From Tubulanus polymorphus (taxonomy: Eukaryota; Animalia; Nemertea), in contig NC_134035.1 in the NCBI RefSeq assembly GCF_964204645.1, forward strand, positions 3,658,001-3,722,000: DNA of 64,000 nt, read 5' to 3'. Shown one piece after another: positions 1,776 to 53,600 of this stretch. The position numbers and the translations under genes were made by a program. Below the pieces are notes generated by a model, which saw only the letters and a list, made by a program, of their open reading frames with translations, was not told the DNA's origin and made no database searches. Position 1 is the first letter of the stretch. Every line of letters begins with the position of its first letter.

Positions 1776-2478
1776 TTATCATTTATTGCTTATTCATTAA
1801 TTCTGTACAAATTTTATAAACTATTTTTGCTAAAAAAATATATACCCCGCAAATGAGTAGAATAGATACAGTGAGACGATTAGCACTTTAAAGGTTGACA
1901 GTTTATTTCGCGCATCTATGTACTATTTAAAAGCCGCGATCACACGGAGATGATTTGGCACGGATCAGGCTCGGGCCAAATTTGACCCGTACCTAATTAG
2001 AGAGCGCGTTCACGCGCAAACCATTCACTCGATACTAAACAATACTCAAACAAAGCGAAATGGATCATTTTTGGCCCAGCACTGTATAACTCGAATCAAA
2101 ACTATAAAACTATGAATTACTAAATTCGTCGCGTCGCATTTAATCACATTAATGTGATTTACCGATACAATCCCCGGTGTGATTTGTGTACACCGAAACA
2201 ACCTGCTGCTATAGGTCGCCGCTATACGATTTCATCGGTGCATTCATCATTTTTATCGTAGATATATAACCGTTATTTTGCACAGGTGTTATTACGAAGT
2301 AGCACCGAGGCAAGTTCATGGATTTCCGAAATCCTGCCGTGAAATAAGCGACGCTTATTATAGTGAATATAACGGTTTGTGGATTTTCGATACAAGGCGT
2401 CAATTATGAAGATATTCTGTGGTGTTTTATCAGCTTGCTATATATATAATGGTGGCTGATAGATTCTTTTCTCGCTAA

Positions 2479-3024
2479 CGAAAAATCTCGGCGTGGCCCG
2501 AATCAGCCACCATAGCTTTCCGAAAAATCTCGGCGTAGCCCGAATCAGCCACCATAGCTTTCCGAAAAATCTCGGCGTAGCCCGAATCAGCCACCATAGC
2601 TTTCCGAAAAATCTCGGGGTGGCCCGAATCAGCCACCATAGCTTTCCGAAAAATCTCGGGGTGGCCCGAATCAGCCACCATAGTCTTCCGAAAAATCTCG
2701 GCGTAGCCCGAATCAGCCACCATAGCTTTCCGAAAAATCTCGGCGTAGCCCGAATCAGCCACCATAGCTTTCCGAAAAATCTCGGGGTGGCCCGAATCAG
2801 CTACCATAGCTTTCCGAAAAATCTCGGCGTAGCCCGAATCAGCCACCATAGCTTTCCGAAAAATCTCGGCGTAGCCCGAATCAGCCACCATAGCTTTCCG
2901 AAAAATCTCGGGGTGGCCCGAATCAGCCACCATAGCTTTCCGAAAAATCTCGGGGTGGCCCGAATCAGCCACCATAGCTTTCCGAAAAATCTCGGCGTGG
3001 CCCGAATCAGCCACCATAGCTTTC
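2479..3024. repeat. 42-bp tandem repeat, 13 near-identical copies
   Basis: Unit CGAAAAATCTCGG(C/G)GT(A/G)GCCCGAATCAGCCACCATAGCTTTC; 546 bp = 13 x 42. Confidence 0.95.
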
Positions 3025-5288
3025 GGGTTCCACGATAAGCGCTTAAGAAAATTGAGGTTGTAATTCTTTTTTTGCCATCTTTTTTCCGTGCTAGAAGGAA
3101 AATAATCTTCTTATTTTGATTCTGACGCAATCTTCGTGATTAAGGAAAACATAACATAACATCTGTATACGGCTATGGAAATTGTAGAGGCCTTCGTGAA
3201 ATACAGAGCGCTGCGGATTCATTACGCATAATCTGTGGCAGGATTGGGAAAGACCGTGTTTAAACTTTGTACACCAAGGGCGGCGCCACTATAGCCTGGA
3301 AAACCTGAGAACAAATCAGCGAAAACGCAGGGAATACGATATGTTTTGCAAAAAAAAGAATCTGACAAAACTCAGAGAATTCGGATATGTTATTGACCAC
3401 GCGTTTCTTTATCAATACGCGATTCATGAAAAATGAATGAATTAACATTTTCAGCCGGGAGATTCTCCATTGACCCGCAGCAGATTTATACTCTAGTATA
3501 AGATAACATGGAAAATCAGAGAATTTGTGAATTGGATGGGGGAGTGGCCACGACCGGTACAACGGGTGCATTCATCCGACGCTTATGAAGAATTAACATC
3601 ATTTTCACGTTAGATAGGCTGGCTACACCATACAGTGAACGTCGTCACGCTTTGATTAGAAATTCCTGACGGCTTTGTCATCTCTCGCGATTCGCGCTGC
3701 AAATTAAAACATTTTCCTTCATAATCCTATAGCGAATCCCAGGACGAGCTATAAATCCCGAATCGAAAGTCGATAAATCTGCCGCAGTGCGACGTGTTCT
3801 CTTTGAAGGCATGATAATGTTTGCGTTACAATTTACGAGGTGTCTTTGCCATTAGGCTCTGTCGATATTGTAGCTTCCTTTTCCGGCCGTTCTCCTCGTT
3901 CGTCGGCGTAGATCGCTAAGCGAGCTGAATTATGCGCCAAATATTGACACGTATCCCGACCAAGACATCTTGATATACGGATTATAGGTCGAGTCCCAAC
4001 TATTCTAACCTCGCTTCACGGTTGCTTTGACATTTTAAACATTGATACGTTGAAATATTCATTATCCGCCCATCGTATCGCGGCCACTGATGTACTAGCG
4101 TTTTATCTCGATTCATTATTTTGATGTCTCAATTTTATTCATGTATTCATCGAGCTTGGTGCAGAAAAAAAAACCATATATATCAGTCGTCTAGCTTCAA
4201 TGAAACACTCTGGGATAGCAGACAACCGAGTGCGAAAAGGTGACTTTGAGTTAACGATATTTAAACGACCTCGACTTTATCCTAGTAATATAGCCATCTT
4301 GATATGATGTGATTTATTTTTCGTATATGAAATTGTTACAGAATTCACGAATAAGCAATATACATTGAAAATGAGTATTAGATGAAGGACTGGTTTGAAG
4401 CAACAGTTTAGAAAACTAACTTGGAAGTTTTTTGACGCCTTGAAAAAAATTACACATTGTATGATAATAATGATCAATAAAGTTATTTCGGATTTGAATA
4501 TATCGATAATTGAATTGAATTGAGCGGCAACCAGTCTAGCCCCCATAAACTGATGACATAGTGCACATCCTCTCAAAAAAAAATTAAAAAAATAATAATC
4601 AAAATTTATCAAAAATGAAAAGAAAATAAGAATTTTAAGATATATCTTATTAAATAAATGCCAAAATTCACAATTATAATTCATATCGTGAAACGCCAAT
4701 ATTGATGATGTAGTACGCATCGGTTCGCACAGACTAATGACGCATACACTTGGTATCAATGTATAAAAACATTATTGTAACGGTGTTTGCGGCGTCAAAA
4801 AAGTTTCGATTTTTACTAAGCGGAATCGGATATCACCGTTCGTGACGATGCGATATGGTTTAGTTTTTTTCTGGCCGTTTCTCAATCGCTCGCAAATAAT
4901 CAAGAACCAGACGACATTTACTACATTAATTATCATACAACGGCAGTTGTTTATACAAAGTATCAGGAGATGCCGACAGAGTCGGTAGATAGATCGCGGA
5001 TATTTTATGAACTCATAAAATATCTAACGCGCACCTGAAAGTCCAATAACGCACCTGCCGAATGCGCCGTATTACTTCCGTATTGAGAAACATATACATT
5101 ATTCGCGAACTACACCTGGCTGCATTATGAATCTTTTATCGCGCCTAATCTTATATCGCGACCGACTTCGTGATGGATGGAGAGCTGTTTCGATGAAGTT
5201 TTCGCCACGGAGCCGTATATCGAAAAGTAAAGAAGTAACGCGCTGACGGCGGCGGGTGGTAAAAAGCGTAGCGAGGAATCATCGTCAT

Positions 5289-24414: not shown

Positions 24415-27400
24415 AGAGCCGTATAACAGCGAAAATTGGCTATGGAAGTTAAATTACTATTTTCAATATCGTTCATCTGAATAGAATGCTAAATTGCAAC
24501 CATCGTGAAAATCATTATCATTAAGCGAGCATGTTTCGATGCGATTCACCGTGAACCTTGTGGCTGATGTAACATAGGTGTTGGGTTCACGAACGGAGAT
24601 CACTGCGGATACAACCATTTCCAGGACTAGAGCGCACGCCATATCGGAAACTTTACAGATTAATGATATAACGCTTATCTTTATCCTTATTCTGATACGG
24701 GATCGGGGTATCAAATATCGAATGACTGATGGATTTCTCGAGAGATGTCGATAACTCATTTACGAGGAAATAAATGCCCGGCATCTTTTGCGAGGAGTCG
24801 ATAAAACGGCCGTATCGACGAGACGTAGATGGATATCCGTGAAACCTACAGGCTCGGCGACACTGATTTCCCTGCGGTACACCGCGTGAAACCGCGAAAA
24901 GAACAAAAAATTGATTCTACCATATAAATCACCGATGTTACGCGGATAAGGTTAACGGTCGCCTCCACGTGTCTTCTACGTGTAATAATTATATTTCGCA
25001 GCGATTTATTTGCAGCCGCGGCGAAGACAGCTCAATTTTTCGTTAATTATATACAGAATGCGTTCGTACCCGACGGTGATTTAGTAACCGGGGTGGAGAT
25101 GCGGGGGTGTCGACGGGCAGGGGAAGTCGGTAGTCATCCCTTGCGTATTGAATGCCAGTTCGTTCATTGCTTGCTCCCAGTGTATTTATTACTCTATTTC
25201 ATACATCGGATTTGCATTTTTCAAACGTTTTTGAATACGTAAATGCAGCTGGTGGAAAAAGCATGAATTAGATACTTTTTTCTCTTCGAAACAACGCGAA
25301 AGGTTTCAAACTAATGATCGATAATTCGCTTAATACGTTAATATCAACATCATCAATTTCCGATTTCAAAATCAAACCCTCTGTTTCGTCAACGGCAGGT
25401 GTGATGGGTTTGTAAGGGACACCAAATCAAAAAAAAAAATCAAACGAAATCTACCGATTAACTAAATGATAAAATGAAAGTCCCTATTTTAAGATCCAAC
25501 GTCAACAGTGTCGAGTAACACTGTGCGTCAACTTCAGACTGGTCAACGGCTGGTTGATAAGTCGACTGCCGGCTTATGCATCAACCGAACGCCGAAAACA
25601 TAAACCAAATTGTAGTTAGTCTCACTGGAAAGGAAACTTTCTATATCTTACTTCGAAATGATGTAGTTAGGCGGTTTTCTTCTTAAGTTGGATTACAGAC
25701 CCGCCGACGAACGTTTCCAATTTCTAGGTATAAAGAATATGTATTTCTATTCTTTACCCGGAGCCCCTCATTTTTAAGCATGGATTTAGAAACGAAAGTA
25801 AACATTTATAATTTCTTCCACAATGCCACATCATCCTTTGACATCACACAAAAAAATCGCGGTTGGGAATGGGTGTTCTAATGGATATATTGTCAGTAGA
25901 TAGCGTGATATGTAAAAATGGCCGCGTCATGTGTGTAGGCAATAAATAGAGAAAATATTCGAAAACATTAGGCAAAACGACCTCAAAGTAGAACGATTTT
26001 TTTTTCTAATCCCCTCCCCCGATCAATCAATTTGTAGTGAATGAATTCAATGTTTTAAGAGATTTAGAAAATTATTTCAAGTCCATCGAAATCCTCCGTC
26101 TCCCAACTTAAAATGAAAATACGGCCTTACGAATATTTCATTCGTTTGAAACATGAATTCGAAAATCCTCCCACACCGCCAGCCTGGGAAAATTTGGTTT
26201 TTGATATTGGTTTTAAACGCGATTTGAGGCCATATGTTACCAAGATTAGACTTAGAGGAAGTACTGCTACATATATACGCATAGAATAGAAATCACGGTG
26301 AAATTTTATAAGTGAATAAAAAGTACTGGATGAAATTAATGATTTGATGATTAATTTTTGCTGTAATAATGTATATTCTATCGAACAGTGCGGTCTGTTT
26401 TATCCATACTCGCTCATATTTGTATATCTCGGTCTTTTAGATTAAGACCGATATTTGAGATTAATTAAACGTTGTTGATTTTGTGTTCGGATTGCAGGCG
26501 AATTATTTGCGAACTAAGAACTCACTTCCGAAATGATTTTTTAACGTAGGGAGCGATCGTGCTAACCAGTAGACCTATAGAATTTCTAGTCAACTTGGCC
26601 AGTGGTTGTTCAGCTTGTGCTATTTGCGTAACAGTCTGAATAATCCAGATCTCCGTCATCTAAAACAGGTAACGAATCTTTTGGCATCGCCTGACCCATA
26701 ACTCTTAATAAGGAAGCTAGCAGTATTCATAAAAAAGTCGATAGTCATCGTTTTGTACATGCGTCGCAGACTGCATATGTCGATAAATGAGAACTTAATA
26801 ATATCTGTATTCGCTGTTATTGTATAACTGTATGAAAACTGTATAGAATCTAATAAAAACACTAGAATTTTTATGAGTTATGAATTTTAATCATAACCCA
26901 CCCGTAAGCGGAGACAAATGTCAAGGTCGCACAGTCGTGAGCAGTCGTGATTATCTAGGATGCACTGATTGCGGGTCTGCAGGCTGCCACGTAACATCAT
27001 CAAATACTCGGGATATGCGGTATTTCCGATTCTAAACATGCTTATTAAACTTCAAATCGTGGAGAAAAAAATCAACGCGATGTGCGGCGAAAGCTAGTGA
27101 GGGTATAATCTATAATATGTGAAATCATAATCGTTTCGTTTGAATGACAGGCTGATTAAGGCGACAGACATGTGAAATGCGAATCACAATATTTTTTAAT
27201 GAAACGGTTTAACTTCGACAATCCTTTATTTTTAGCGCGTTTTCGAATAATTTTGGATGCATGAATAATTCAATTCCAAAGGCTTTATTTCAAAGGCTTG
27301 CTGAAATGTGCATATATGTATGTATATATGACCCTTATCAGTCGCCAAGGTATGTTTTTAAGCGTGCTTTTTTGAACTCTTTTATCTTCGTATCAGGATT

Positions 27401-27848
27401 GGTAATGACAATGTTTGAATTCATTGTTCGAATCATCTTGTTTTAACGCGCAAATCTCCTCGTCGCGGATCATTTAGAAATGGTCCCATCTCCAAAGGGC
27501 AATTGATCTCTACTAAGAGTTGAAATCCAATAATATCGTTCCACGGTTCAGTCCACGCAGAAAAGAAATCCTGAATCCGTAGTAAATTGATTTCGCAGAA
27601 GATTTTACCAAACAGGTGTAGTTAACGGAATTCTGACCCATCCCTTCAAAGTTGGAAATATTCTCAAAATTTTTCGATATACTTATTGGTGGGCGCGGGG
27701 AATACGGAAGTTAAAAACACATTTGAATATTAGAAGCAGAAATTAACACCGATATATAAACTTTATTCCTTATCCTTAGATTTTCATTTATAACTTAAAA
27801 CTCAACAATTCGAATCAGTGGCGCGTTTGTGTATAATATGATACGTTA

Positions 27849-29499
27849 CTAATTGACGACGACTTCGTTTCTGAATGTCTTAACTTTACCGTCGTAGCGA
27901 CCCGAATAGAACGACCTGAAGAACTTATCGCCCGGCTCATGGTAGACATCGATGTACTCTTCGAAGCCCTTGTAGATTTCCGGAATTGCCATATCGAACG
28001 CTAGCTCTTTCAGCAGGAATTTCACTCCCTCTTGCGTGTCGACTTCTACCGGCGAGTTGGAGGGCCGGTCCAAGCTTTGAACGATCGACATGAGCACGTC
28101 TTTCGTCAGTATTTCGGCGTCCTGTTTGAACTCCGAACACGTCTCGTACAGGCGAAGTACCTCGGTAAGCTTGTTCTTGTAAGCGACTGATGTTTCTATT
28201 TCTGCTTTCCAGTCGACGAAATGGAACTTCTTCTGGTCGATATCCAAATCTTCCATCACTTTCTGAGCCAAAGTCACCAGCTTGCGCGTTTCTTTGCGAG
28301 CGATCTTCTCCGGCTTGCTTCGGCCGACTGCTATGTAATTATGAATGTACGGCACCGTGGGTATAATCACAAGCACCTACAAAAAGACCGAATGCTGATG
28401 TACCGGTTTATCAGTCTGTTTTTGTTTTTAAATATACTCCTCAGAAAATATTTGGAATCGACTGCAATATGTCATAGAAGATTAAACGGATTGATCCGCA
28501 ATGCGGGCGTGAGCTGTATGTTTTACATCACTTATGTCAAACTGATGGCAGGTTGGTATGTTCGTCTACAGCGCATTGAGGAAGCTTACTAATTTCACAG
28601 CAGGTACTGGCATCACGAACAAACCGCGAGTGAATTTAGGGGATGGTCTCGAGGGGTCTAGCCCCCGCCTATTTATTGAGGTCGCCCTTTTTGTCAATTA
28701 GACAACGATTGTTCAAAACCACAAATTCGACACTCATCCTTGCGAAAAAATTGCTAATTTTCGGATGTTTTTCTTCAAAAATCATGAATGAAAAACACTG
28801 AGGTTGGTACTCCGTATTTATTTGTATGATTTCTAAGGACTTTCGAAAAATCACAATTCAACGCAATATTCCTTGCAATCTTGATAAAACTATCGTATTT
28901 CGATTTTTTCGCCATTTTGGGGGGAGCGAACAGTCGTTACACGGACATCAGCTATCATCAACGGCGCTAATTAAGTCGCGTTCTCCGCCCAGCAAGATAA
29001 ATCGGTAAGTTCTAAACCTCGTTTTAAGGAAAAAATACGACCCCTATGACGACTCGGCTCTAGGTTTTTTTTTATTTCATACGATTTTTGAGTGAAAATT
29101 TCCGAATTTACGTCTATACGTCATGCAAGAAAGCATCAGGGTCCAGTTGCTTTTTAGAATAACTAACTAACGAAAGCGTACAGGGAAGTGCAAATGAGCG
29201 TATTGAAGGATTCTTACCTTTTCGGCATTTTGGTCAGCGAATGCCAACATCTTTGCCATGTTCTCTTCTTTATAGTAGTATGTGTTGCCGGGACATGATC
29301 CACAAACGATCGGTAGATTTTTTCCTTTCAGATATTCCAAGTAGTTCGAATCTGACCTTTATTATATAGATAAAATACATACGTGAATATGTAATCTCCA
29401 TCTATGATAAACATAGATTGACAAAAAATGAAAAACTTTTAACAATCGACAAATATGAGATTTTTCTTTGAAAATCCTTAACAAAACTCACGGGCTCAT
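27849..29499 (-). CDS. tRNA-dependent cyclodipeptide synthase (CDPS)-like protein, ~224 aa; complement(join(27849..28376,29218..29356,29492..29499))
   Basis: Spliced translation MSPSDSNYLEYLKGKNLPIVCGSCPGNTYYYKEENMAKMLAFADQNAEK|VLVIIPTVPYIHNYIAVGRSKPEKIARK...EGVKFLLKELAF...IDVYHEP...EVVVN. It is colinear with the AlbC motifs as recalled (GISAGNSYF, ADGRS, ETPEY, NYVLAEAP, LCYH, terminal VVV). GT-AG introns 28377-29217 (phase 0) and 29357-29491 (phase 2, donor GTGAGT) keep the frame. AATAAA at 27762-27767 on the minus strand. The two large exons are solid; the 8-nt start segment is less certain. Confidence 0.85.
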
Positions 29500-29695
29500 T
29501 ATGGGAGGCGTATGTGGCGTTCGGTAACCGTGCCTGTCTGTGAGGTACTGAATGGATCGCCCTTTAGTCACGATCTATTCTGTCATCGCCATATGGAACA
29601 AGCTAATGAAAAAGTTATTATCCCAACTTATATTTACCATAACTGATCTGAATGATGTGAAATTCAATAAATTACCAAGTTATTAATGAACGACT

Positions 29696-29848
29696 GGGAC
29701 ATTTTCCTACTTTACAAATGGGACAATTTTTCCGGGGACATATTTTCCAGGGAAACTTTTTCCCTGGGACATTTTTTCCGAGGACATATTTTCCAGGACA
29801 TTTTTTCCGGGTAGATCTTTTCTTGGGACATTTTTTACCGTATACCTG
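29696..29848. repeat. ~15-bp degenerate tandem repeat (GGACATTTTTTCC), resembling transposon subterminal repeats
   Basis: About nine GGACA(T)nCC units. Confidence 0.7.
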
Positions 29849-31252: not shown

Positions 31253-32137
31253 ATGGGAGCTACGTATTCCACGGAGGCAGCTGCAGCTGTAACGACGACG
31301 ACTGGTGCGAATATCTTACCAACGACCACGACGAAAGAATGCCCGATGAATAATCAGGCATCCGAAGCCGAAACCGAACATTCCGTTCAAATGAAATACG
31401 CCGGCGAATGTCCGATGCACCGCGAGGAGGGAACCGCGTCGGGCGCGACCGCGCAGCGCGAGCATACCGTGCAGATGTCGTACGCGAGCGAGTGCCCGAT
31501 GCATTTATCGCAGCTGGCCGCCGACGAAAAGATCGACCCGACGAACATGATGCCGCCGCCGAACCAGCAACCGTCGCCGGGGCAACCGTTTCGATTGTCG
31601 ACGACGCGCGAAGTCTCGACGATTCCGAAAGGCGGCGCCACCGCCGATAACGCCGGCCAGAACTGGGTCTACCCGTCGCAGCAGATGTTCTGGAACGCGA
31701 TGATTCGCAAAGGCTGGCGCTGGGAGGACGATGCGTTGTCGGCGAACGACATGGCGCACATCATACGCATACACAACGCGAACAATGAACACGCGTGGCA
31801 GGAGGTGTTGCGCTGGGAGGCGTTGCACGCGCGCGAATGCGACGACCCGAAGCTCGTGCGGTTCGGCGGCAAGGCGAAGGAGTTCTCGCCGCGCGCGCGC
31901 ATACGCGGCTGGATGGGTTACGAGTTGCCGTTCGATCGACACGACTGGATCGTCGACCGCTGCGGTCGCGAGGTGCGCTACGTGATCGACTACTACGACG
32001 GCGGCGCGGTCGACCCGGCGACGAGTCGGTTCACGTTGCTTGACGTGCGGCCGGCGTTGGATTCGTTCGAGGCGTTGTGGGATCGCATGACGGTCGCCTG
32101 GTGGCGGTGGACGTCGAAGGATCAGTCGGAAAGTTGA
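31253..32137 (+). CDS. HCCS: Holocytochrome c-type synthase (cytochrome c heme lyase), 294 aa, single coding exon
   Basis: N-terminal MG and three CPM heme-regulatory motifs. Family signatures [72 protein letters not shown] and [10 protein letters not shown] splice acceptor (TTTCTTGCAG) ends at 31232, implying an upstream UTR exon. Confidence 0.97.
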
Positions 32138-38600: not shown

Positions 38601-41600
38601 CACCCCTAGACTATATCTGTAACTGTGTATCGGTCATCTCTACCTGGAGAGAAGTGATATTGGTATTATCACCCCTAGTCTATATCTGTAACTGTATATC
38701 AGTCATCTCTACCTAGAGAGAAGTGAGATTGGTATTATCACCCCTAGCCTATATCTGTTACTGTGTATCAGTCATCTCTACCTGGAGGGAAGTGAGATTG
38801 GTATTGTCACCCCTAGCCTATATCTGTTACTGTGTATCAGTCATCTCTCCCTAGAGAGAAGTGAGATTGGTATTATCACCCCTAGCCTATATCTGTTACT
38901 GTGTATCAGTCATCTCTACCTGGAGGGAAGTGAGATTGGTATTGTCACCCCTAGCCTATATCTGTTACTGTGTATCAGTCATCTCTCCCTAGAGAGAAGT
39001 GAGATTGGTATTATCACCCCTAGCCTATATCTGTTACTGTGTATCAGTCATCTCTACCTGGAGGGAAGTGAGATTGGTATTGTCACCCCTAGCCTATATC
39101 TGTTACTGTGTATCAGTCATCTCTCCCTAGAGAGAAGTGAGATTGGTATTATCACCCCTAGCCTATATCCGTTACTGTGTATCAGTCATCTCTACCTGGA
39201 GAGAAGTGATGTTGGTATTATCACCCCTAGCCTATATCTGTCACTGTGTATCAGTCATCTCTACCTGGATGGTAGTGATATTGGTATTATTACCCCTAGC
39301 CTATATCTGTTACTGTGTATCAGTCATCTCTCCTTGGAGAGAAGTGACATTGGTATTATGACCCCTAGCATTTATCTGTAACTGTATATCAGTCATCTCT
39401 ACCTGGAGAGAAATGATATTGGTATCATTACCCCTAGCCTTTATCTGTAACTGTATATCAGTCATCTCTACCTGGATGGTAGTGATATTGGTATTATTAC
39501 CCCTAGCCTATATCTGTCACTGTGTATCAGTCATCTCTACCTGGAGAGAAGTGATAATGATATTATCACCCCTAGTCTATATCTGTTACTGTGTATCAGT
39601 CATCTCTCCTTGGAGAGAAGTGACATTGGTATTATGACCCCTAGTCTTTATCTGTAACTGTATATCAGTCATCTCTACCTGGAGGGAAGTGATATTGGTA
39701 TTATAACCCCTAGCCTTTATCTGTAACTGTATATCAGTCATCTCTACCTGGAGAGAAGTGATATTGGTATCATTACCCCTAGCCTATATCTGTAACTGTG
39801 TATCAGTCATCTCTACCTGGATGGTAGTGAGTGATATTGGTATTATTACCCCTAGCCTATATCTGTTACTGTGTATCAGTCATCTCTCCTTGGAGAGAAG
39901 TGACATTGGTATTATGACCCCTAGCCTTTATCTGTAACTGTATATCAGTCATCTCTACCTGGAGAGAAGTGATATTGGTATCATTACCCCTAGCCTTTAT
40001 CTGTAACTGTATATCAGTCATCTCTACCTGGATGGTAGTGAGTGATATTGGTATTATTACCCCTAGCCTATATCTGTTACTGTGTATCAGTCATCTCTCC
40101 TTGGAGAGAAGTGACATTGGTATTATGACCCCTAGCCTTTATCTGTAACTGTATATCAGTCATCTCTACCTGGAGAGAAGTGATATTGGTATCATTACCC
40201 CTAGCCTTTATCTGTAACTGTATATCAGTCATCTCTACCTGGAGGGAAGTGATATTGGTATTATTACCCCTAGCCTATATCTGTAACTGTGTATCAGTCA
40301 TCTCTACCTGGATGGTAGTGATATTGGTATTATTACCCCTAGCCTATATCTGTCACTGTGTATCAGTCATCTCTACCTGGAGAGAAGTGATATTGATATT
40401 ATCACCCCTAGTCTATATCTGTTACTGTGTATCAGTCATCTCTACCTAGAGAGAAGTGAGATTGGTATTATCACCCCTAGCCTTTATCTGTAACTGTATA
40501 TCAGTCATCTCTACCTGGAGGGAAGCGATATTGGTATCATTACCCCTAGCCTATATCTGTAACTGTATATCAGTCATCTCTACCTGGAGGGAAGTGATAT
40601 TGGTATTATAACCCCTAGCCTTTATCTGTAACTGTATATCAGTCATCTCTACCTGGAGCGAAGTGATATTGGTATCATTACCCCTAGCCTATATCTGTAA
40701 CTGTGTATCAGTCATCTCTACCTGGATGGTAGTGATATTGGTATTATTACCCCTAGCCTATATCTGTTACTGTGTATCAGTCATCTCTCCTTGGAGAGAA
40801 GTGACATTGGTATTATTACCCCTAGCCTTTATCTGTAACTGTATATCAGTCATCTCTACCTGGAGGGAAGTGATATTGGTATTATTACCCCTAGCCTTTA
40901 TCTGTAACTGTATATCAGTCATCTCTACCTGGAGAGAAGTGATATTGGTATCATTACCCCTAGCCTATATCTGTAACTGTGTATCAGTCATCTCTACCTG
41001 GAGGGAAGTGATATTGGTATTATTACCCCTAGCCTTTATCTGTAACTGTATATCAGTCATCTCTACCTGGAGAGAAGTGAGATTGGTATTATCACCCCTA
41101 GCCTATATCTGTAACTGTATATCAGTCATCTCTACCTGGAGGGAAGCGATATTGGTATTATTACCCCTAGCCTATATCTGTAACTGTATATCAGTCATCT
41201 CTACCTGGAGGGAAGTGATATTGGTATTATTACCCCTAGCCTTTATCTGTAACTGTATATCAGTCATCTCTACCTGGAGAGAAGTGATATTGGTATCATT
41301 ACCCCTAGCCTATATCTGTAACTGTGTATCAGTCATCTCTACCTGGATGGTAGTGATATTGGTATTATTACCCCTAGCCTATATCTGTTACTGTGTATCA
41401 GTCATCTCTCCTTGGAGAGAAGTGACATTGGTATTATGACCCCTAGCCTTTATCTGTAACTGTATATCAGTCATCTCTACCTGGAGAGAAGTGATATTGG
41501 TATCATTACCCCTAGCCTTTATCTGTAACTGTATATCAGTCATCTCTACCTGGAGGGAAGTGATATTGGTATTATTACCTCTAGCCTATATCTGTTACTG

Positions 41601-44600
41601 TGTATCAGTCATCTCTCCTTGGAGAGAAGTGACATTGGTATTATGACCCCTAGCCTTTATCTGTAACTGTATATCAGTCATCTCTCCTTGGAGAGAAGTG
41701 ACATTGGTATTATGACCCCTAGCCTTTATCTGTAACTGTGTATCAGTCATCTCTACCTGGAGGGAATTGATATTGGTATCATTACCCCTAGCCTATATCT
41801 GTCACTGTGTATCAGTCATCTCTACCTGGAGAGAAGTGATATTGGTATTATTACCCCTAGCCTATATCTGTAACTGTATATCAGTCATCTCTACCTGGAG
41901 GGAAGTGATATTTGTATCATTACCCCTAGCCTTTATCTGTATCTGTGTATCAGTCATCTCTCCCTAGAGAGAAGTGAGATTGGTATCATTACCCTTAGTC
42001 TATATCTGTAACTGTGTATCAATCATCTCTTCCTGGAGAGAAGTGACATTGGTATTATCACCCCTGGTCTATATCTGTAATTGTATATCAGTCATCTCTG
42101 CCTGGAGAGAAGTGATATTGGTATTAGGGCCCCTAGCCTGTATATTTAACTGTGCCAGTCAGTCTGTCAGTCAGGCAGAATTTGTCTTATCATTTGGTTT
42201 GCCGTTGGTCTGGCGTCTCAGGAATATTTCTTTCCCTGCCATCCTTGACGTATACTTTTAAGGATTAGTGTCTTGATCGCAGACATAGGGTGTCGTCTCA
42301 ATTCCTGCTGCGCGAGATACGTTATTGTTTTTTGTATATTTCAGCACTTCAACCCAGAAGCATTGTATTCTAGTGTGTAATTCGCCGCCGTATCAAATTC
42401 CCAGTCAAAACAACATTAACTACATGGGTTACACGGCTGACGAGCTGGCTACGATGCTTGGAGAGGTAGGATTAATGTCTATTTCAACTTGACTCGATAG
42501 CACATCATGTGGCCTAGCTTGGTCAGTTTTGGTGTTACATACCGATAAAAGTCAGGACCAGCAAGGACTGGCATTGATTTTAAATCTTAAACTGTATCTA
42601 AGGATATCCAAAAAGTCTTCATTGAAAGGGGTTCATGAGAGAGAGGCCATGATTTGAAAGTTTGACAATATGTTTCCTTGCCTACATACCAAACTTCAGT
42701 GGGTAGGCATGAAATCATACTGTTAAACTTTCAAATCATGGAGTCACCATTCATTATTCAAACCCTTTCAATTCAGACTTTTCTGCAATCCTTCAATTCT
42801 GTCAAAAATGGATTGAAAAACGATATTTTAGGTCAACTGTCCACCCATTCTGGTCCTAATAAGATTTTTATCAGGTATGTAGCACCAAAATTGACTTGAG
42901 CTAGGCCGGCTGATGTGCACGGAGTCCCAATTAAGGTCGTTGACTTGGCAGGTTTATCCGAGAAATGCCCTTTCTTCTTCTGGACTCCGGCCTCCCAAGT
43001 TTCCTAGATCCGCTCCCCTGCAAACTACTTGAAAGCATACGCCGTTGATTTTGTTTTCAGCGTGGAGTGCATTTATCGATAGTCGCGCCGCGTAAATTGC
43101 CCGTGTTGCAGAAACTGTTCGATCGAGCGTGCGGCGACATTCAGCTGATGGCGCAAAAAGATTACACGATCGATTCCCGACATATGGTGCTATTGAAAGG
43201 ATATCAGTTACAAGGTAGCGCGCTTCAGTATCTATTCTTAAAGGGCAAATGCCATCAAAATTGTACTTTCCGCGATTTCTTAACCAGAAGAAACTTTAGT
43301 ATACATATAACTATCACCACTACTACTATCACTCCTAAAACGATAAAATACCGCATGAAATGTCTAGTGAAATGACTGGAAGCGGCGTTCAGAGATGGCT
43401 TCAGAAACACGCACCTGCTAACATAAACAATAACAGTGAGCAGGTGCTGAAATTGCCAATTTAAAAGTGATATTTCTCAGTAATGGCTGAACTAAAATTC
43501 AAACCAGTTCCATATTTGATATTTGTGAATACATCACATTTGAAAAAGAATTTTACACAATATTATATTTTGATGGCATTTGCCCTTTAAGTCCATTGGC
43601 GGAGGGGGCTTTCGTAGATTGGGTATCGTCATACAGGGTGATGCCACTGACCTGGAAAACTCATGGAATCAGAAAAGTGGAATAGAATTCAGGTAAAATT
43701 CCAGGGAATTCGACATTTTTACCGAATACCTGGAAAACATTGGGAAAAAGTCTGGAACTTTGGAATAATTCCCGGTTTGGAAATGATAGGGAATTTGGAA
43801 AATTTTCCTCAAATCGGGGAAATATTTGGGAAATTCATTTACATTTCACGTATTGCATTTGCGGAGGGCAACTTTCTTCAGTTTCTTTTAATTTCCCTTG
43901 AGAATTACCTTTATCAACCAGTCACCACTAAAATGTTGATTGTAGGATGATGGTGTCTGTTCCTTGTGAAAATTGAACAATCACTCATGAAATACTTGTG
44001 AAAAACTTGGGAATTATGAATTCATATAACTGGGAACCATGCCATAAGTAATTCTTAAAATATTCCTGATGTTATTTTGCCCCAATGTCAATGATACTGG
44101 GCCCAGAAGTTAATCATATATGTGTTTGGGACTGAAATATTGATTATCTCCTTCTAATTGTTACAGAACGACCTCCGAGTCCATCCGCTGAGAAAGAGAA
44201 ACTCATGAATCAACAACCGATCAAACAGGTTGGAAGTCCAGCTGGTTCCCGTGAGTATACGTGTATTTGTGTCTCCGTGATTACAAAATGTGCCGTAAGC
44301 CTGGGAGGGTCCCTACGACTCCTTGATTCCTTGAAAACTCCTTCTGTACTGAAAGTATGCTTTTAAAGGTGCTCGAAACTCCTTTAATTTGAACAAAATG
44401 CCCAAAACTCCTTCAATTTTTAGAAATAGGCAGACCAGTTTGGAGTTGTAGACTAGGTGTAGAAATCGTAATTATTGTACGGCAGGGGTCCAAAAGAAAA
44501 ATCTGAAGGGCTTTTCTGGAATAAGTAGCCTTGCTAAAAGTTGTGTGCAAGGTCCCCTCGGCTTAAAAAAATGAGGGGATTTGATAAATTCTACCAAAAA

Positions 44601-47600: not shown

Positions 47601-50600
47601 GAAGGCACCGCGACCTAGTCAAAGTCATTGAACATTACAAATTTGGTATTAGGCCATCCAAAAATAAAGGTCTGTTTGCCGTCACCCGACCGACCCGACT
47701 TCAAAGGTACCGAGTGGAAACTTTTTTCTTGGATTCATTGAAATAAATTTTATTTTTGATACAAATGGCCGACCCACTGCCGATGTATGAGCTACGTATG
47801 TTTGAAGTTAAGTGTGCATCGCGTGAAAACATGCCTCGACTATAGTTGATGTTTTCCAGGAAACTGGCAGTGTTCCAATAAGCTGCCATTCATTCTTAGT
47901 GACTATATTAAAGCTGGTTATGTTATAGCGTGCATATATTCAATCTACTGTTTCATTTTGAACGCAGATTTGGGATATTGTTTCCACTAAAAGAGGTGAT
48001 GATAAATTTGTTGATTTTTTTTGCCACAAAATTTTGCAAATAAAAATGATTCTACCTTCCTACTGACTTATCCCAAAAATTTTAGTAGGTGTAACGGCAA
48101 AACAGACAATTAATTTGGGATGGCCTAATATCCAAATCTTGATTGATATGAATATTTAAGCTAGGAAATGCTGAAAATCATTGTGATAAACGGGTTTCAT
48201 CTCTAACAGAATCGTATCAACTCGGAGGTTCCACTGGAATCAAAATTTTACCTCTTTTTTAACATTTTTATACGAACCTGTTAAAAATAGGCAAATTGGC
48301 TGCGACTATCGAAAATTGCTTCCAACGTGCCTTAAAAAATAGCTTGAAAATGGTATAAATCTAGCTTGAAATGGCTTGAATTTCACCTGAGCTTGAGACA
48401 ATGAACCCTGTTGTAACACCGGTAGCCGGTAGGTCATTGATTATTTTGTTTTGACTGATCGGTTTTGTTTAATTCAGGGAAACGTCATGCAACAACAACA
48501 GCAACAATCGCCGATGAATTCTCAGCCTCAGGTCGTCGCCAGCAACCAAAACCCGATCATGCAACAGAACCAAGGAATGCAAAGCATGATGGGCAACGCG
48601 GGCATGATGGGTAATCAAGGCAACCCGAACATGCCCGCACAGATGGGTCAAGGCCATCAGATGAACCAAAATCAAATGGTGCAACAGGGTCAAATGGGGC
48701 AACTCGGGCAGATGGGCCAGCAAGGGCAGATGAATATGAACCCGAATCAGCAGGTGTCGCAACAAGGTCAAATGATCGCAGGCCAGCAGCAGATGAACGT
48801 TCAGAGTCAGATGATCGGCGCCGGCGGTCAGCAAGGGGGTCTTACGCAACCGGCCGACCCGATGCATTCGCAGGGTCAGATGACGAACACAGCTCAGCTG
48901 CCGGTGATCAGAATCTGGACGGGACAACTGGAATACCAGGAGAAGGTGAAAGCGCACGCGAAAGACACCGGCACGAAGGTGACGCGGTCGTTACAGTGCG
49001 AAGTGTTCTCGCATCAAGGAGTAGAACTGTAAGCTCTTTTCATTCATTGCAGGGGAGGGGGCATCTGACCTGGAATGAGACAAATCTAGGATGAAATCAG
49101 TGAAAATTCAGGGAATTCGATAAATTTTGCCAAAAACCTAGAAAACCAAGCGATTCAAATAACCACTAATTTCTTTTATCTATTGGTGATTCGTGATATA
49201 TGAATAGATTAGAACATTTTAAAGATATATTTCCATTCACCTGCCACACATTCACTTGGGAAATCTCAGGGGATTTGTAAATTGACGGAAAGCAGTCACA
49301 CTGATAGATCGATTACTAATTTATTGATGTATGTTTTCTATATTTCAAAGTGGAAGCGCCAGATGGCCGCAGCGACTGATCATGCAGCTCATTCCTCAAC
49401 AGTTACTGGCTCAGCTGCACAGTTTATTCAAAGAAGCTCGAAACGTCGAGTTCAGATTCCCACAAGTCGACGATTCACTTAATAATCTACGCAGAGTGAT
49501 GTCTAATGGATTCGTAAGTAACGCAACCCGATGATGAGATTGATTTGGTGATAAGTGATGATTTGACTTAAAAGGATTTGAGTGAAGAGAAATATACATC
49601 ATTACCTCTAGCCTTTATCTGTAACTGTGTATCAGAGATCTCTCCCTGTAGAGAAGTGATATTGGTATTATTACCCCTAACCTATATCTGTAACTGTGTA
49701 TCAGTCATCTCTCCTAGAGAGAAGTGATATTGGTATTATCACCCCTAGCCTATATCTGTAACTGTGTTTCAGTCATCTCTACCTGGAGAGAATTGATATT
49801 GGTATTATCACCCCTAGCCTATATCTGTAACTGTGTTTCAGTCATCTCTACCTGGAGAGAATTGATATTGGTATTATCACCCCTAGCCTATATCTGTAAC
49901 TGTGTACCAGTCATCTCTACCTGGAGGGAAGTGATATTGGTATTATTACCCCTAGCCTATATCTGTAACCGTGTATCAGTAATCTCTCCCTAGAGAGAAG
50001 TGATATTGGTATTATTACCTTTAGCCTTTACCTGTAACCGTGTATCAGTCATCTCTACCTAGAGAGAAGTGATATTGGTATTATTACCCCTAGCCTTTAT
50101 CTGTAACTGTGTATCAGTCATCTCTCCTTGGAGAGAAGTGATATTGGTATTATTACCTCTAGCCTTTATCTGTAACTGTATATCAATCATCTCTACCTGG
50201 AGAGAAGTGATATTGATATTATTACCCCTAGTCTATATCTGTAACTGTGTATCTGTCATCTCTCCTTGGAGAGAAGTGATATTGGTATCATTACCTCTAG
50301 CCTTTATCTGTAACTGTATATCAGTCATCTCTACCTAGAGAGAAGTGACATTTGTATTATGACCCCTAGCCTTTATCTGTAACTGTGTATCAGTCATCTC
50401 TCCTTGGAGAGAAGTGATATTGGTATTATTACCTCTAGCCTTTATCTGTAACTGTATATCAATCATCTCTACCTGGAGAGAAGTGATATTGATATTATTA
50501 CCCCTAGTCTATATCTGTAACTGTGTATCTGTCATCTCTCCTTGGAGAGAAGTGATATTGGTATCATTACCCCTAGTCTATATCTGTTACTGTGTATCAG

Positions 50601-53600
50601 TCATCTCTCCCTGGAGAGAAGTGATATTGGTATTATTACCCCTAGCCTATATCTGTAACTGTGTATCAGTCATCTCTCCTTGGAGAGAAGTGATATTGGT
50701 ATCATTACCTCTAGCCTTTATCTGTAACTGTATATCAGTCATCTCTACCTAGAGAGAAGTGACATTTGTATTATGACCCCTAGCCTTTATCTGTAACTGT
50801 GTGTCAGTCATCTCTACCTGTAGGGAAGTGATATTGGTATCATTCCCCCTAGCCTATATCTGTAACTGTATATCAGTCATCTCTACCTGGAGAGAAGTGA
50901 TATTGGTATTATTACCCCTAACCTATATCTGTAACTGTGTATCAGTCATCTCTCCCTGTAGAGAAGTGATATTGGTATTATTACCCCTAGCCTATATCTG
51001 TAACTGTGTATCAGTCATCTCTCCTTGGAGAGAAGTGATATTGGTATCATTACCTCTAGCCTTTATCTGTAACTGTATATCAGTCATCTCTACCTAGAGA
51101 GAAGTGACATTTGTATTATGACCCCTAGCCTTTATCTGTAACTGTGTGTCAGTCATCTCTACCTGTAGGGAAGTGATATTGGTATCATTCCCCCTAGCCT
51201 ATATCTGTAACTGTATATCAGTCATCTCTACCTGGAGAGAAGTGATATTGGTATTATTACCCCTAACCTATATCTGTAACTGTGTATCAGTCATCTCTCC
51301 CTGTAGAGAAGTGATATTGGTATTATTACCCCTAGCCTATATCTGTAACTGTGTATCAGTCATCTCTCCCTGGAGAGAAGTGATATTGGTATTATTACCC
51401 CTAGCCTATAGCTGTATTTGTATATCAGTCATCTCTCCCTGGAGAGAAGTGATATTGGTATTATTACCCCTAGCCTATATCTGTAACTGTGTATCAGTCA
51501 TCTCTCCCTGGAGAGAAGTGATATTGGTATTATCACCCCTAGTCTATATCTGTAACTGTGTATCAGTCATCTCTCCTTGGAGAGAAGTGATATTGGTATT
51601 ATTACCCCTAGTCTATATCTGTAACTGTGTATCAGTCATCTCTCCTTGGAGAGAAGTGATATTGGTATTATTACCCCTAGCCTATAGCTGTATTTGTATA
51701 TCAGTCATCTCTCCCTGGAGAGAAGTGATATTGGTATTATTACCCCTAGCCTATATCTGTAACTGTGTATCAGTCATCTCTCCCTGGAGAGAAGTGATAT
51801 TGGTATTATCACCCTAGTCTATATCTGTAACTGTGTATCAATCATCTCTACCTGGAGAGAAGTGATATTGGTATCATTACCCATAGCCTATATCTGTAAC
51901 TGTGTATCAGTCATCTCTCCCTGGAGAGAAGTGATATTGGTATTATCACCCCTAGTCTATATCTGTAACTGTGTATCAGTCATCTCTCCTTGGAGAGAAG
52001 TGATATTGGTATTATTACCCCTAGTCTATATCTGTAACTGTGTATCAGTCATCTCTCCTTGGAGAGAAGTGATATTGGTATTATTACCCCTAGCCTATAG
52101 CTGTATTTGTATATCAGTCATCTCTCCCTGGAGAGAAGTGATATTGGTATTATTACCCCTAGCCTATATCTGTAACTGTGTATCAGTCATCTCTCCCTGG
52201 AGAGAAGTGATATTGGTATTATCACCCCTAGTCTATATCTGTAACTGTGTATCAATCATCTCTACCTGGAGAGAAGTGATATTGGTATCATTACCCATAG
52301 CCTATATCTGTAACTGTGTATCAGTCATCTCTCCCTGGAGAGAAGTGATATTGGTATTATTACCCCTAGCCTATATCTGTATCTGTGTATCAGTCATCTC
52401 TCCCTGGAGAGAAGTGACATTTGTATTATGACCCCTAGCCTTTATCTGTAACTGTGTGTCAGTCATCTCTACCTGTAGGGAAGTGATATTGGTATCATTC
52501 CCCCTAGCCTATATCTGTAACTGTATATCAGTCATCTCTACCTGGAGAGAAGTGATATTGGTATTATTACCCCTAACCTATATCTGTAACTGTGTATCAG
52601 TCATCTCTCCCTGTAGAGAAGTGATATTGGTTTTATTACCCCTAGCCTATATCTGTAACTGTGTATCAGTCATCTCTCCCTGGAGAGAAGTGATATTGGT
52701 ATTATTACCCCTAGCCTATATCTGTAACTGTGTATCAGTCATCTCTCCCTGTAGAGAAGTGATATTGGTTTTATTACCCCTAGCCTATATCTGTAACTGT
52801 GTATCAGTCATCTCTCCCTGGAGAGAAGTGATATTGGTATTATTACCCCTAGCCTATAGCTGTATTTGTATATCAGTCATCTCTCCCTGGAGAGAAGTGA
52901 TATTGGTATTATTACCCCTAGCCTATATCTGTAACTGTGTATCAGTCATCTCTCCCTGGAGAGAAGTGATATTGGTATTATCACCCCTAGTCTATATCTG
53001 TAACTGTGTATCAATCATCTCTACCTGGAGAGAAGTGATATTGGTATCATTACCCATAGCCTATATCTGTAACTGTGTATCAGTCATCTCTCCCTGGAGA
53101 GAAGTGATATTGGTATTATTACCCCTAGCCTATATCTGTATCTGTGTATCAGTCATCTCTCCCTGTAGAGAAGTGACATTGGTATTATTACCCCTAGCCT
53201 ATATCTGTTACTGTTTATCAGTCATCTCTTCCTGGAGAGAAGTGATATATTGGTATCATTACCCCTAGCCTATATCTGTAACTGTGTATCAGTAATCTCT
53301 CCCTGGAGAGAAGTGATATTGGAATTATCACCCCTAGCCTATATCTGTAATTGTGTATCAGTCATCTCCCCCTGGAGAGAAGTGATATTGGTATTATTAC
53401 CCCTAGTCTATATCTGTAACTGTTTATCAGTCATCTCTTCCTGGAGAGAAGTGATATTGGTATCATTACCCATAGCCTATATCTGTAACTGTGTATCAGT
53501 CATCTCTCCCTGGAGAGAAGTGATATTGGTATTATTACCCATAGCCTATATCTGTAACTGTGTATCAGTCATCTCTCCCTGGAGAGAAGTGATATTGGTA

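What the first reader, a model, noticed from the sequence alone, without database searches (positions are those of the whole stretch)
27849..29499. Intron-containing cyclodipeptide synthase (CDPS)-like gene in an animal genome
Seen: an intact three-segment ORF (~224 aa) with canonical spliceosomal introns and a poly(A) signal, lying beside the ordinary animal genes HCCS and MED25, so bacterial contamination is unlikely. The ORF track shows only the last exon; the N-terminal GxxPGNxY motif appears only after splicing in 29218-29356. Established: CDPSs (AlbC, Rv2275, YvmC) use aminoacyl-tRNAs to make diketopiperazines. They are mostly bacterial, with a few animal examples such as Nematostella. 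The protein keeps the equivalents of AlbC N40, E182, Y202 and H203, consistent with the NYH subfamily. Inference: an anciently transferred, domesticated aa-tRNA-dependent biosynthetic enzyme that may give this animal its own small-peptide metabolite pathway. No tailoring enzyme (P450, oxidase, methyltransferase) is visible nearby.
Basis: partly seen in the sequence, partly recalled or inferred. Interest (0 to 1): 0.9.

Follow-up and report, generated by a model that had tools for sequence, protein, structure and literature searches.

The report
Ribbon-worm cyclodipeptide synthase gene with introns
The ribbon worm Tubulanus polymorphus carries and expresses its own three-exon copy of a mostly bacterial enzyme family that makes cyclic dipeptides from charged tRNAs; it shares an intron with coral copies, and its catalytic serine is replaced by cysteine.

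Summary
Window 27849-29499 (minus strand) holds a three-exon gene with GT..AG introns of 135 and 841 nt. It encodes 224 aa and is identical to the NCBI model [quoted passage not shown].

- **Family:** the last exon alone passes the Pfam CDPS cut-off. The full public model scores 47.8 bits on PF16715 and 62.8 bits on TIGR04539. An AlphaFold model (pLDDT 93) matches only solved CDPSs at the top of the PDB (TM 0.7-0.8).
- **Expression:** spliced contigs from two studies carry exactly the predicted junctions. DNA runs hold only the unspliced form.
- **Genome context:** the gene is single-copy on a 14-Mb scaffold, 1.75 kb head-to-head from an HCCS gene.
- **Evolution:** it falls in an animal clade "B" (support 96/93) with scleractinian coral genes (Oculina, Desmophyllum). 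These share its phase-0 intron at the same codon boundary. This clade is distinct from the Nematostella Nvec-CDPS2 clade, whose introns lie elsewhere.
- **Active site:** N40, E182, Y202 and H203 equivalents are kept. The nucleophile Ser37 is Cys24, Tyr178 is Phe169, Trp206 is lost, and the P1 pocket carries two Asp.

Animal CDPSs are already known, so this is a new, variant member. Activity and product are inferred, not shown. The scan noted the Ser-to-Cys change on this same stretch before (s1-492925).

The parts
29492..29540 (-). Exon 1: at least 41 nt of 5'UTR, the ATG at 29499-29497, and 8 coding bases (29499-29492). It ends before the GTGAGT donor.
   Evidence: Sequence. X4 contig record 14 reaches 29540 and joins 29490/29354 with a cut offset of +2.
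29357..29491 (-). Intron 1, 135 nt, GT..AG, phase 2.
   Evidence: donor and acceptor sequences. Joint 'skips 135' in the X4 contig.
29218..29356 (-). Exon 2 (139 nt), residues 3-49, with the active-site loop G22-S23-C24-P25-G26-N27. The Cys24 codon TGT is at 29295-29293 and the Asn27 codon at 29286-29284.
   Evidence: Translation. Aligned to the G-I-S/C-A-G-N loop of AlbC, with the Cys opposite the Cys of the AlbC S37C structure 4Q24.
28377..29217 (-). Intron 2, 841 nt, GT..AG, phase 0, between Lys49 and Val50. Its position is shared with coral and other eukaryotic clade-B genes.
   Evidence: Joint 'skips 841' in X4 and X5 contigs, absent from DNA runs. Homologous junctions in L003, L005, L006, L017 and L018.
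27849..28376 (-). Exon 3 coding part, residues 50-224 plus the TAG stop (27851-27849). Codons: Phe169 28019-28017, Glu173 28007-28005, Asp177 27995-27993, Asp192 27950-27948, Tyr194 27944-27942, His195 27941-27939.
   Evidence: ORF list. PF16715 30.9 bits and TIGR04539 44.2 bits on this exon alone. Column analysis.
27762..27767 (-). AATAAA poly(A) signal candidate in the 3'UTR.
   Evidence: Sequence only. The transcript contig ends earlier, at 27836, next to a SNP, so the 3' end is not mapped.

Best explanation
This is a genuine, expressed, host-encoded gene of the nemertean Tubulanus polymorphus for a cytosolic 224-aa protein of the cyclodipeptide synthase (CDPS) family, NYH type. It belongs to an animal lineage of CDPS genes (clade B) that also occurs in scleractinian corals and is marked by one phase-0 intron just after the active-site exon. 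The gene therefore descends from an already intron-bearing animal gene, not from a recent bacterial insertion.

Inferred mechanism:
1. The enzyme binds an aminoacyl-tRNA on its basic helix (8 Lys/Arg in residues 67-92).
2. It transfers the aminoacyl group to Cys24 as a thioester, in place of the usual Ser ester.
3. It condenses this with a second aminoacyl-tRNA and releases a diketopiperazine. Glu173 and Tyr194 serve as in AlbC.

The unusually acidic pockets (Asp177, Asp192, Asp142, Glu196, and loss of the conserved Trp) suggest polar or basic rather than large hydrophobic substrates.

Shown here: gene structure, splicing, family and fold, single copy, clade and shared intron, residue states. 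Inferred: catalysis, thioester chemistry, substrate class, biological role.
For: - **Family and fold:** PF16715 30.9 bits on exon 3 and 47.8 bits on the public model. TIGR04539 62.8 bits against a cut-off of 45. AF2 pLDDT 93.2, pTM 0.89. The top 47 Foldseek PDB hits are all CDPSs (TM up to 0.80), followed by TyrRS and TrpRS.
- **Expression and integration:** spliced contigs in two studies and unspliced DNA contigs. Single locus in the 268-Mb genome. HCCS lies 1.75 kb away.
- **Clade and intron:** careful tree 96/93 for Tubulanus plus clade B, and SH-aLRT 96 with named Oculina and Desmophyllum included. The junction falls at the same place in every case, before the V/I-L-x-F/I-I-P strand: AEK|V in Tubulanus, SDK|V and TDC|V in L005 and L003, SDQ|I in Oculina L018.
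- **Catalytic competence is plausible:**
  - AlbC S37C keeps part of its activity and forms a Phe thioester (PMC3105412).
  - In ParcuCDPS only the S26C and Y167F active-site variants still made product (PMC7613923).
  - Cys occupies this column in 3 other natural representatives, one in a dense prokaryotic context.
  - Phe occupies the Tyr178 column in 27 of 170 relatives.
  - N27, E173 and Y194 are invariant in 74 full-length relatives, H195 is nearly so (70 of 74), and all four are kept here.
- **Polymorphism:** all 8 SNPs and 4 indels seen between runs lie outside the coding exons.
Against: - No biochemical data exist for this protein.
- Three of 15 nearly invariant family columns deviate: Ser to Cys24, Tyr to Phe169, Trp to Gly198 with a one-residue insertion.
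- AlbC Y178F is 'poorly active' and S37C only partly active, so the double change could mean a slow or altered enzyme.
- The terminal branch is long: 1.7 substitutions per site against about 1.1-1.3 for its clade-B sisters.
- No closer orthologue (above 40% identity) was found in 15 billion proteins, so purifying selection could not be measured.
- The runs are not on record as RNA. I infer this from the intron-less contigs.
- The absence of coding SNPs is weak evidence (chance about 0.07).
Confidence: 0.7

Rival explanations
1. The gene is expressed, but the protein is no longer a cyclodipeptide synthase. With Cys for Ser, Phe for Tyr178, the conserved Trp lost and acidic pockets, it may be a slow or dead enzyme. 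Alternatively it may have taken on another role: an aminoacyl-tRNA binder, an aminoacyl transferase to another acceptor, or a maker of linear dipeptides.
For: - Three nearly invariant columns are changed, and Asp at the AlbC-186 position is unique among 74 relatives.
- The terminal branch is long.
- AlbC Y178F is poorly active.
- Gondry et al. 2018 set aside some animal sequences, including Platynereis, as too short or lacking an obvious catalytic residue.
Against: - The two active-site changes are exactly the two that model CDPSs tolerate.
- A nucleophile is retained.
- N40, E182, Y202 and H203 equivalents, the fold and the basic helix are kept.
- The reading frame is intact across three exons at about 35% identity to its nearest kin, and the gene is transcribed and spliced.
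Confidence: 0.24
2. The gene entered the Tubulanus lineage by a separate, recent transfer directly from a bacterium or archaeon, independent of the cnidarian genes.
For: - CDPSs are mostly prokaryotic.
- Among its nearer neighbours on the tree is a group that includes a gene in a dense prokaryotic context with ankyrin-repeat and transposase neighbours (P0187).
- No other nemertean or bilaterian copy was recovered.
Against: - The phase-0 intron sits at the identical codon boundary as in Oculina and at least four other eukaryotic loci.
- Tubulanus groups with clade B at 96/93.
- A clade-specific N-x-Y-Y-Y-K-E-E-N motif is shared.
- An independent intron gain at the same site and phase would be needed.
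Confidence: 0.04
3. Contamination or assembly artefact: the CDPS belongs to a microbe or another animal and not to the worm's genome.
For: None found. Only the general rarity of CDPSs in bilaterians points this way.
Against: - The gene has spliceosomal introns with matching spliced transcripts in two studies.
- Whole-genome and Hi-C-type contigs of the same species are continuous across the locus.
- It sits on a 13.98-Mb scaffold beside HCCS.
- GC content (about 0.40) is like the rest of the window.
Confidence: 0.01

Closest known systems
Nvec-CDPS2 of Nematostella vectensis (Seguin et al. 2011; listed in Gondry et al. 2018, PMC5816076) and its hexacoral relatives (clade A here)
   Same: An animal-encoded, intron-containing CDPS of the NYH type, with the same fold family and a standalone protein of about 220-240 aa.
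   Different: - It is a different clade: clade A has 100/99 support and stands apart from clade B.
- Intron positions differ. Nematostella L014 has introns after about residues 100 and 169 and none at the Tubulanus site.
- Clade A keeps Ser and Tyr, and has hydrophobic P1 residues (L-G-F-P-W-Y-I-F against V-G-I-P-W-F-D-D here).
- An AU test does not reject one common animal origin of A and B (p = 0.57).
Clade-B CDPS genes of scleractinian corals: Oculina patagonica ACROYT_G023657, Desmophyllum pertusum OS493_006329, and unnamed contigs from deep-sea coral and other metagenomes
   Same: These are the nearest relatives (about 31-36% identity). They share the phase-0 intron position and the Y-Y-(Y)-K/R-x-E motif after the active-site loop.
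   Different: All of them have Ser at the nucleophile, Tyr in the YxxxE motif, the Trp-Pro after Tyr-His, and hydrophobic residues at AlbC positions 186 and 200. Tubulanus has an extra tiny first exon and a longer branch.
AlbC (Streptomyces noursei) and its S37C variant (PDB 3OQV, 4Q24)
   Same: Same fold (TM about 0.70-0.74). The G-x-(S/C)-x-G-N loop aligns residue for residue, and the natural Cys24 sits where the engineered Cys37 forms a thioester.
   Different: About 20% identity. In AlbC the Cys is an engineered, partly active variant, whereas here it is the natural state and is combined with Phe at the Tyr178 position.
Platynereis dumerilii CDPS-like EST (CAM91773; Aravind et al. 2010, PMC2922099)
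   Same: Another spiralian (annelid) CDPS homologue, reported as induced in the antibacterial immune response.

Membership tests
Cyclodipeptide synthase family (Pfam PF16715 / TIGR04539) | Profile score above the curated cut-off | tested here: met
   PF16715: 30.9 bits on exon 3 alone and 47.8 bits on P0001 (cut-off 27). TIGR04539: 62.8 bits (cut-off 45).
Cyclodipeptide synthase family (Pfam PF16715 / TIGR04539) | Rossmann-type CDPS fold related to class-Ic aminoacyl-tRNA synthetases | tested here: met
   AF2 pLDDT 93.2. Foldseek top hits are YvmC, Shae-CDPS, BtCDPS and AlbC (E 5e-10, TM 0.7-0.8), followed by TyrRS and TrpRS.
Cyclodipeptide synthase family (Pfam PF16715 / TIGR04539) | Catalytic serine nucleophile (AlbC Ser37) in the GxSxxN loop | tested here: not met
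   Cys24 occupies the column, which is Ser in 142, Cys in 4, Lys in 2 and Asn in 1 of the 149 residues aligned there. A nucleophile is kept, but it is not Ser.
Cyclodipeptide synthase family (Pfam PF16715 / TIGR04539) | Tyr178 and Glu182 of the YxxxE helix | tested here: inconclusive
   Glu173 is present and the column is invariant. Tyr is replaced by Phe169, and Phe occurs in 27 of 170 relatives.
Cyclodipeptide synthase family (Pfam PF16715 / TIGR04539) | Tyr202 (cyclisation tyrosine) | tested here: met
   Tyr194, invariant in 74 of 74.
Cyclodipeptide synthase family (Pfam PF16715 / TIGR04539) | Basic tRNA-binding patch on helix alpha-4 | tested here: inconclusive
   There are 8 Lys/Arg against 4 Asp/Glu in residues 67-92, which the model shows as a helix at 71-92. 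No docking or surface mapping was done.
Cyclodipeptide synthase family (Pfam PF16715 / TIGR04539) | Forms a cyclodipeptide from two aminoacyl-tRNAs | not testable with these tools
   Needs expression and LC-MS.
NYH subfamily of CDPSs | Asn40, Tyr202 and His203 signature | tested here: met
   Asn27, Tyr194 and His195.
Animal CDPS clade B (defined here) | Phase-0 intron between the active-site exon and the strand V/I-L-x-F/I-I-P, and grouping on the tree | tested here: met
   Junctions in the window, L003 (two genes), L005 and L018 (Oculina); for L006, L012, L013 and L017 one search shows only the upstream exon and/or the acceptor. Clade support 96/93 and 96.

The most novel reading that the evidence does not exclude
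Tubulanus carries a natural thiol-nucleophile CDPS that has been retuned, through acidic P1 and P2 pockets, to make a cyclodipeptide containing a basic or polar residue. That would be a host-made diketopiperazine, for example for defence or in mucus. Clade B would be an old metazoan gene family inherited from before the cnidarian-bilaterian split and lost in most bilaterians.
Probability: 0.3. Interest if true: 0.7.

Novelty: new variant of a known kind. Interest (0 to 1): 0.5.

Why it matters
Animal-encoded CDPSs are rare, and only Nvec-CDPS2 has been characterised. This locus adds three things.

- **A well-documented bilaterian example.** The nemertean gene has transcript support and a chromosome-scale context.
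- **A second animal CDPS lineage.** It shares an intron with coral genes, which bears on whether animals acquired the enzyme once, early, or several times.
- **A natural experiment on the catalytic nucleophile.** It combines Cys for Ser with Phe for Tyr178, and its pocket chemistry is unlike that of characterised CDPSs.

If the protein is active, it would point to an animal-made diketopiperazine in a phylum known for chemical defence. It would also give enzymologists a natural thioester-type CDPS.

Tried and rejected
- **Word-indexed protein search** with exon 3 found only the gene's own NCBI model. Relatives appeared only with the exhaustive search and with profile queries.
- **Exon 2 alone** (46 aa) gives no Pfam or NCBIfam hit.
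- **Paralogues in the genome:** none.
- **Tailoring enzymes:** P450 matches exist elsewhere in the genome but none within C11:3658001-3722000. Nitroreductase (CDO-type) and 2OG-FeII oxygenase profiles gave no match genome-wide in the exon-by-exon search. That search is a lower bound.
- **Other ORFs of at least 98 aa in 16-37.4 kb of the window** (eight tested) gave no credible Pfam family.
- **Rfam scan of 20-36 kb:** nothing.
- **Literature:** no paper combines 'cyclodipeptide synthase' with 'Nemertea', and the ENA sample accessions tried were not found in papers. The organism behind ERZ25767047, ERZ26222911 and ERZ27290690 stays unknown.
- **Rejected readings:** contamination and a recent independent bacterial transfer (see rivals).
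- **Monophyly of all animal CDPSs** could be neither shown nor rejected (AU p = 0.57).
- **Joining exons:** They were searched one by one by reference. The only full-length sequence used was the public protein P0001 returned by the database.

Full report
**1. What is in the sequence**

On the minus strand, the 175-codon ORF 27849-28376 is preceded by an AG acceptor. Upstream, 29218-29356 translates in frame to 46 residues that hold a G-S-C-P-G-N-T-Y loop, and it ends at a GTAAGA donor. A third piece supplies the ATG (29499-29497) and five more coding bases before a GTGAGT donor.
- The introns are 135 nt (phase 2) and 841 nt (phase 0). Both are GT..AG.
- An AATAAA lies at 27767-27762.
- The joined step is left out.
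- The full-length sequence used below is the public protein P0001. A database search returned it, and it reads exactly as the three-exon model: [quoted passage not shown], 224 aa, on a 13,976,313-bp scaffold.
- The organism is therefore a palaeonemertean ribbon worm.

**2. Is it transcribed and spliced, and is it in the worm's DNA?**

Five runs of the same species label, from two studies, hold the stretch. Results of laying them on 27300-29700:
- A 729-nt contig of X4 maps as 27836-28374, 29216-29354 and 29490-29540.
- It skips 841 and 135 nt with CT..AC ends on the plus strand (cut +2). These are exactly junctions 28376/29218 and 29356/29492.
- A 605-nt contig of X5 (2014, another study and sample) skips the same 841 nt.
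- X1 (one 4,236-nt contig) and X2 cover the introns and never show the joined form. X2's loose ends carry a GATCGAT junction typical of Hi-C. The joined form is therefore RNA and not a retrocopy.
- The runs are not on record as RNA. That they are RNA is my inference from these contigs.
- All differences between runs (8 SNPs, 4 indels) fall in introns or flanks. None falls in the 675 coding bases. This is only weak evidence of constraint (chance about 0.07).

The gene is single-copy in the 268-Mb assembly. The window is ordinary animal DNA: GC about 0.40, with microsatellites and minisatellites. An intronless HCCS gene (PF01265, 210.9 bits) lies head-to-head 1.75 kb away at 31253-32137. A Q-rich exon at 48451-49032 gives a sub-threshold Med25 match.

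**3. Family and fold**

| Query | PF16715 (cut-off 27) | TIGR04539 (cut-off 45) |
|---|---|---|
| Exon 3 alone | 30.9 bits | 44.2 bits |
| P0001 (full length) | 47.8 bits | 62.8 bits |

- Sequence matches to solved structures are BtCDPS, AlbC and YvmC.
- An AlphaFold2 model built on 74 relatives has pLDDT 93.2 and pTM 0.89.
- In the PDB, its first 47 Foldseek matches are all CDPSs (YvmC, S. haemolyticus CDPS, BtCDPS, AlbC, Rv2275 and others; TM up to 0.80). Tyrosyl- and tryptophanyl-tRNA synthetases follow.
- There is no signal peptide-like N-terminus, so the protein should meet aminoacyl-tRNAs in the cytosol (inference).

**4. Active site**

In HMMER alignments the G22-S23-C24-P25-G26-N27 loop lines up residue for residue with the G35-I-S37-A-G-N40 loop of AlbC. 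Cys24 lies opposite the engineered Cys of the AlbC S37C structure 4Q24.

| AlbC position | Residue here | State of that column in relatives |
|---|---|---|
| Ser37 (nucleophile) | Cys24 | Ser 142, Cys 4, Lys 2, Asn 1 (170 rows, 21 gaps) |
| Asn40 | Asn27 | invariant |
| Tyr178 | Phe169 | Tyr 135, Phe 27 (of 170) |
| Glu182 | Glu173 | invariant |
| Tyr202 | Tyr194 | invariant |
| His203 | His195 | nearly invariant |
| Trp206 | Gly198, with a one-residue insertion | Trp in 68 of 74 |

- I mapped the pocket positions through the published Nvec2 pocket strings (Gondry et al. 2018 supplement).
- P1 pocket (AlbC 33, 35, 65, 67, 119, 185, 186, 200) reads V-G-I-P-W-F-D-D. Asp at 186 is unique among 74 relatives, and Asp at 200 occurs in 3 of 74.
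- P2 pocket includes Asp142 and Glu196, where Arg or Lys is usual.

Published mutagenesis bears directly on these changes:
- AlbC S37C keeps part of the activity and forms a phenylalanyl thioester. S37A is dead and Y178F is poorly active (PMC3105412).
- In the His-specific ParcuCDPS, only the S26C and Y167F active-site variants still made product. Polar P1 residues at the positions equivalent to AlbC 185 and 200 select histidine (PMC7613923).
- The three other natural Cys representatives group together. P0073, the one whose context I fetched, sits among densely packed prokaryotic genes. A Cys nucleophile is therefore viable in nature.

Taken together, catalysis through a Cys24 thioester is plausible but unproven. 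The substrate class (polar or basic) is a low-confidence inference.

**5. Relatives and history**

The exhaustive search found 131 representatives. The best is only 36% identical (E 3e-22).
- The nearest hits (P0002-P0007, P0012, P0013) are ORF calls on contigs with sparse, short gene calls. I read these as eukaryotic DNA in "metagenome" assemblies.
- Their homology begins exactly at Tubulanus Val50.
- Their upstream active-site exons lie 0.4-1.7 kb away. The junction is the same phase-0 boundary.
- Some of these contigs come from whole-tissue metagenomes of deep-sea corals (BioSamples within SAMN12856788-811; Vohsen et al. 2020, PMC7068898).
- A profile of this group then recovered named scleractinian proteins: Oculina patagonica ACROYT_G023657 and Desmophyllum pertusum OS493_006329.
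- In the Oculina genome the gene has two exons. Its single intron falls at the same place (…S-D-Q | I-L-L-F-I-P).

Trees:
- A careful ML tree puts Tubulanus with this "clade B" at 96/93. Tubulanus is sister to the rest (95/86).
- A second tree that includes the named corals gives SH-aLRT 96.
- The Nematostella and hexacoral group that holds Nvec-CDPS2-type proteins (clade A, 100/99) is separate.
- The Nematostella gene has introns after about residues 100 and 169 and none at the clade-B site.
- Oculina has both A and B copies.
- An AU test does not reject a single clade of all animal sequences (p = 0.57; the constrained tree is 2.8 log-likelihood units better).

A single early acquisition followed by duplication is therefore possible but not shown. 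A recent direct bacterial transfer into Tubulanus is unlikely. Vertical descent with wide loss in Bilateria cannot be told apart from animal-to-animal transfer with these data. The Tubulanus branch is about 1.4 times longer than its sisters' paths.

**6. Known or new?**
- Eukaryotic CDPSs were predicted in Nematostella, Platynereis and Gibberella in 2010. The Platynereis transcript was noted as immune-induced (PMC2922099).
- Nvec-CDPS2 was characterised in 2011.
- Gondry et al. 2018 list further metazoan sequences from Exaiptasia, Acropora and Orbicella. They set Platynereis aside.
- No paper links CDPS with Nemertea, and NCBI calls this gene "uncharacterized".

The kind is therefore known. 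Three things are new here:
- the nemertean member with transcript proof;
- the recognition of an intron-sharing clade B distinct from the Nvec-CDPS2 clade;
- the natural Cys/Phe active site with acidic pockets.

Another first-stage note of this scan (s1-492925) flagged the Ser-to-Cys and Tyr-to-Phe changes on this same stretch. I reached the same reading and tested it.

**7. Surroundings**
- No P450 match lies in the window, although the genome has many elsewhere.
- No nitroreductase (CDO-type) or 2OG-oxygenase profile match was found.
- The eight other long ORFs tested between 16 and 37.4 kb have no credible family.
- No Rfam family was found in 20-36 kb.
- There is thus no sign of a biosynthetic cluster, as is usual for animal genes.

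**Verdict**
- Enzyme activity, thioester chemistry, substrates and role are inferred.
- Novelty: a new variant of a known kind.
- Interest is moderate (0.5).

Noticed in passing
L006:688-2700, L007:154-2170, L008:1078-1600, L011:1502-3500 (deep-sea coral metagenome contigs): Two or three tandem copies of the upstream active-site exon (variants L-G-L-S-S-E-N, V-F-S-P-G-N and L-G-L-S-P-E-N) precede one shared last exon of a clade-B CDPS gene. They could be alternative first exons or decayed duplicates.
   Followed up: partly
L003:99-227 with 445-1104, and L003:7408-8609, L004:6896-7561, L005:6173-8690 (ENA assembly ERZ25767047, organism unknown): One unidentified eukaryote carries at least four clade-B CDPS paralogues on Mb-size contigs, two of them in tandem 7 kb apart. 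One paralogue has Cys in place of the invariant Asn40 (G-M-S-I-G-C). Several carry long low-complexity inserts before the YxxxE helix.
   Followed up: partly
P0026, P0073 (L016:4001-4783), P0076: A small clade of CDPS representatives naturally has Cys at the nucleophile position and keeps Tyr178; P0073, the one whose context I fetched, lies among densely packed prokaryotic genes. I found no mention of natural Cys-CDPSs in the papers read.
   Followed up: partly
G000:C2:4643792-4645159, C9:14429001-14430356, C3:24731013-24732323, C8:16598657-16599955, C3:8388919-8390295, C4:20870700-20871995: Six full-length cytochrome P450 matches (profile positions 1 to about 460) lie in single open frames of 500-560 aa without stops. 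These are apparently intronless P450 genes in an otherwise intron-rich animal genome.
   Followed up: no
window 29719-29836: A 15-nt tandem repeat (about 8 copies, unit G-G-G-A-C-A-T-T-T-T-T-T-C-C-G) lies between the CDPS and HCCS genes. Contig depth in the whole-genome run jumps about 7-fold here, so the unit is repeated elsewhere in the genome.
   Followed up: no
window 31253-32137 (+): The holocytochrome c synthase (HCCS) gene is a single uninterrupted 294-codon ORF, head-to-head with the CDPS gene. Its N-terminus has two extra repeats of a Q-M-x-Y-A-x-E-C-P-M-H motif.
   Followed up: no
window 40663-42261 and 50414-53822 (+); also 2475-3130: Long minisatellite arrays read as open frames of 100-270 aa, with repeated units such as [22 protein letters not shown]. 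They flank the MED25-like exon at 48451-49032 and show strong AT skew.
   Followed up: no
L015:4001-4708 (ENA ERZ25039592 contig_689, 1.6 Mb): The prokaryotic CDPS P0187, one of the tree-nearest non-clade-B rows to Tubulanus, sits in a 1.6-Mb contig beside ankyrin-repeat, transposase and chloramphenicol-phosphotransferase-like genes. This looks like a host-associated bacterium and is a possible type of donor lineage.
   Followed up: no
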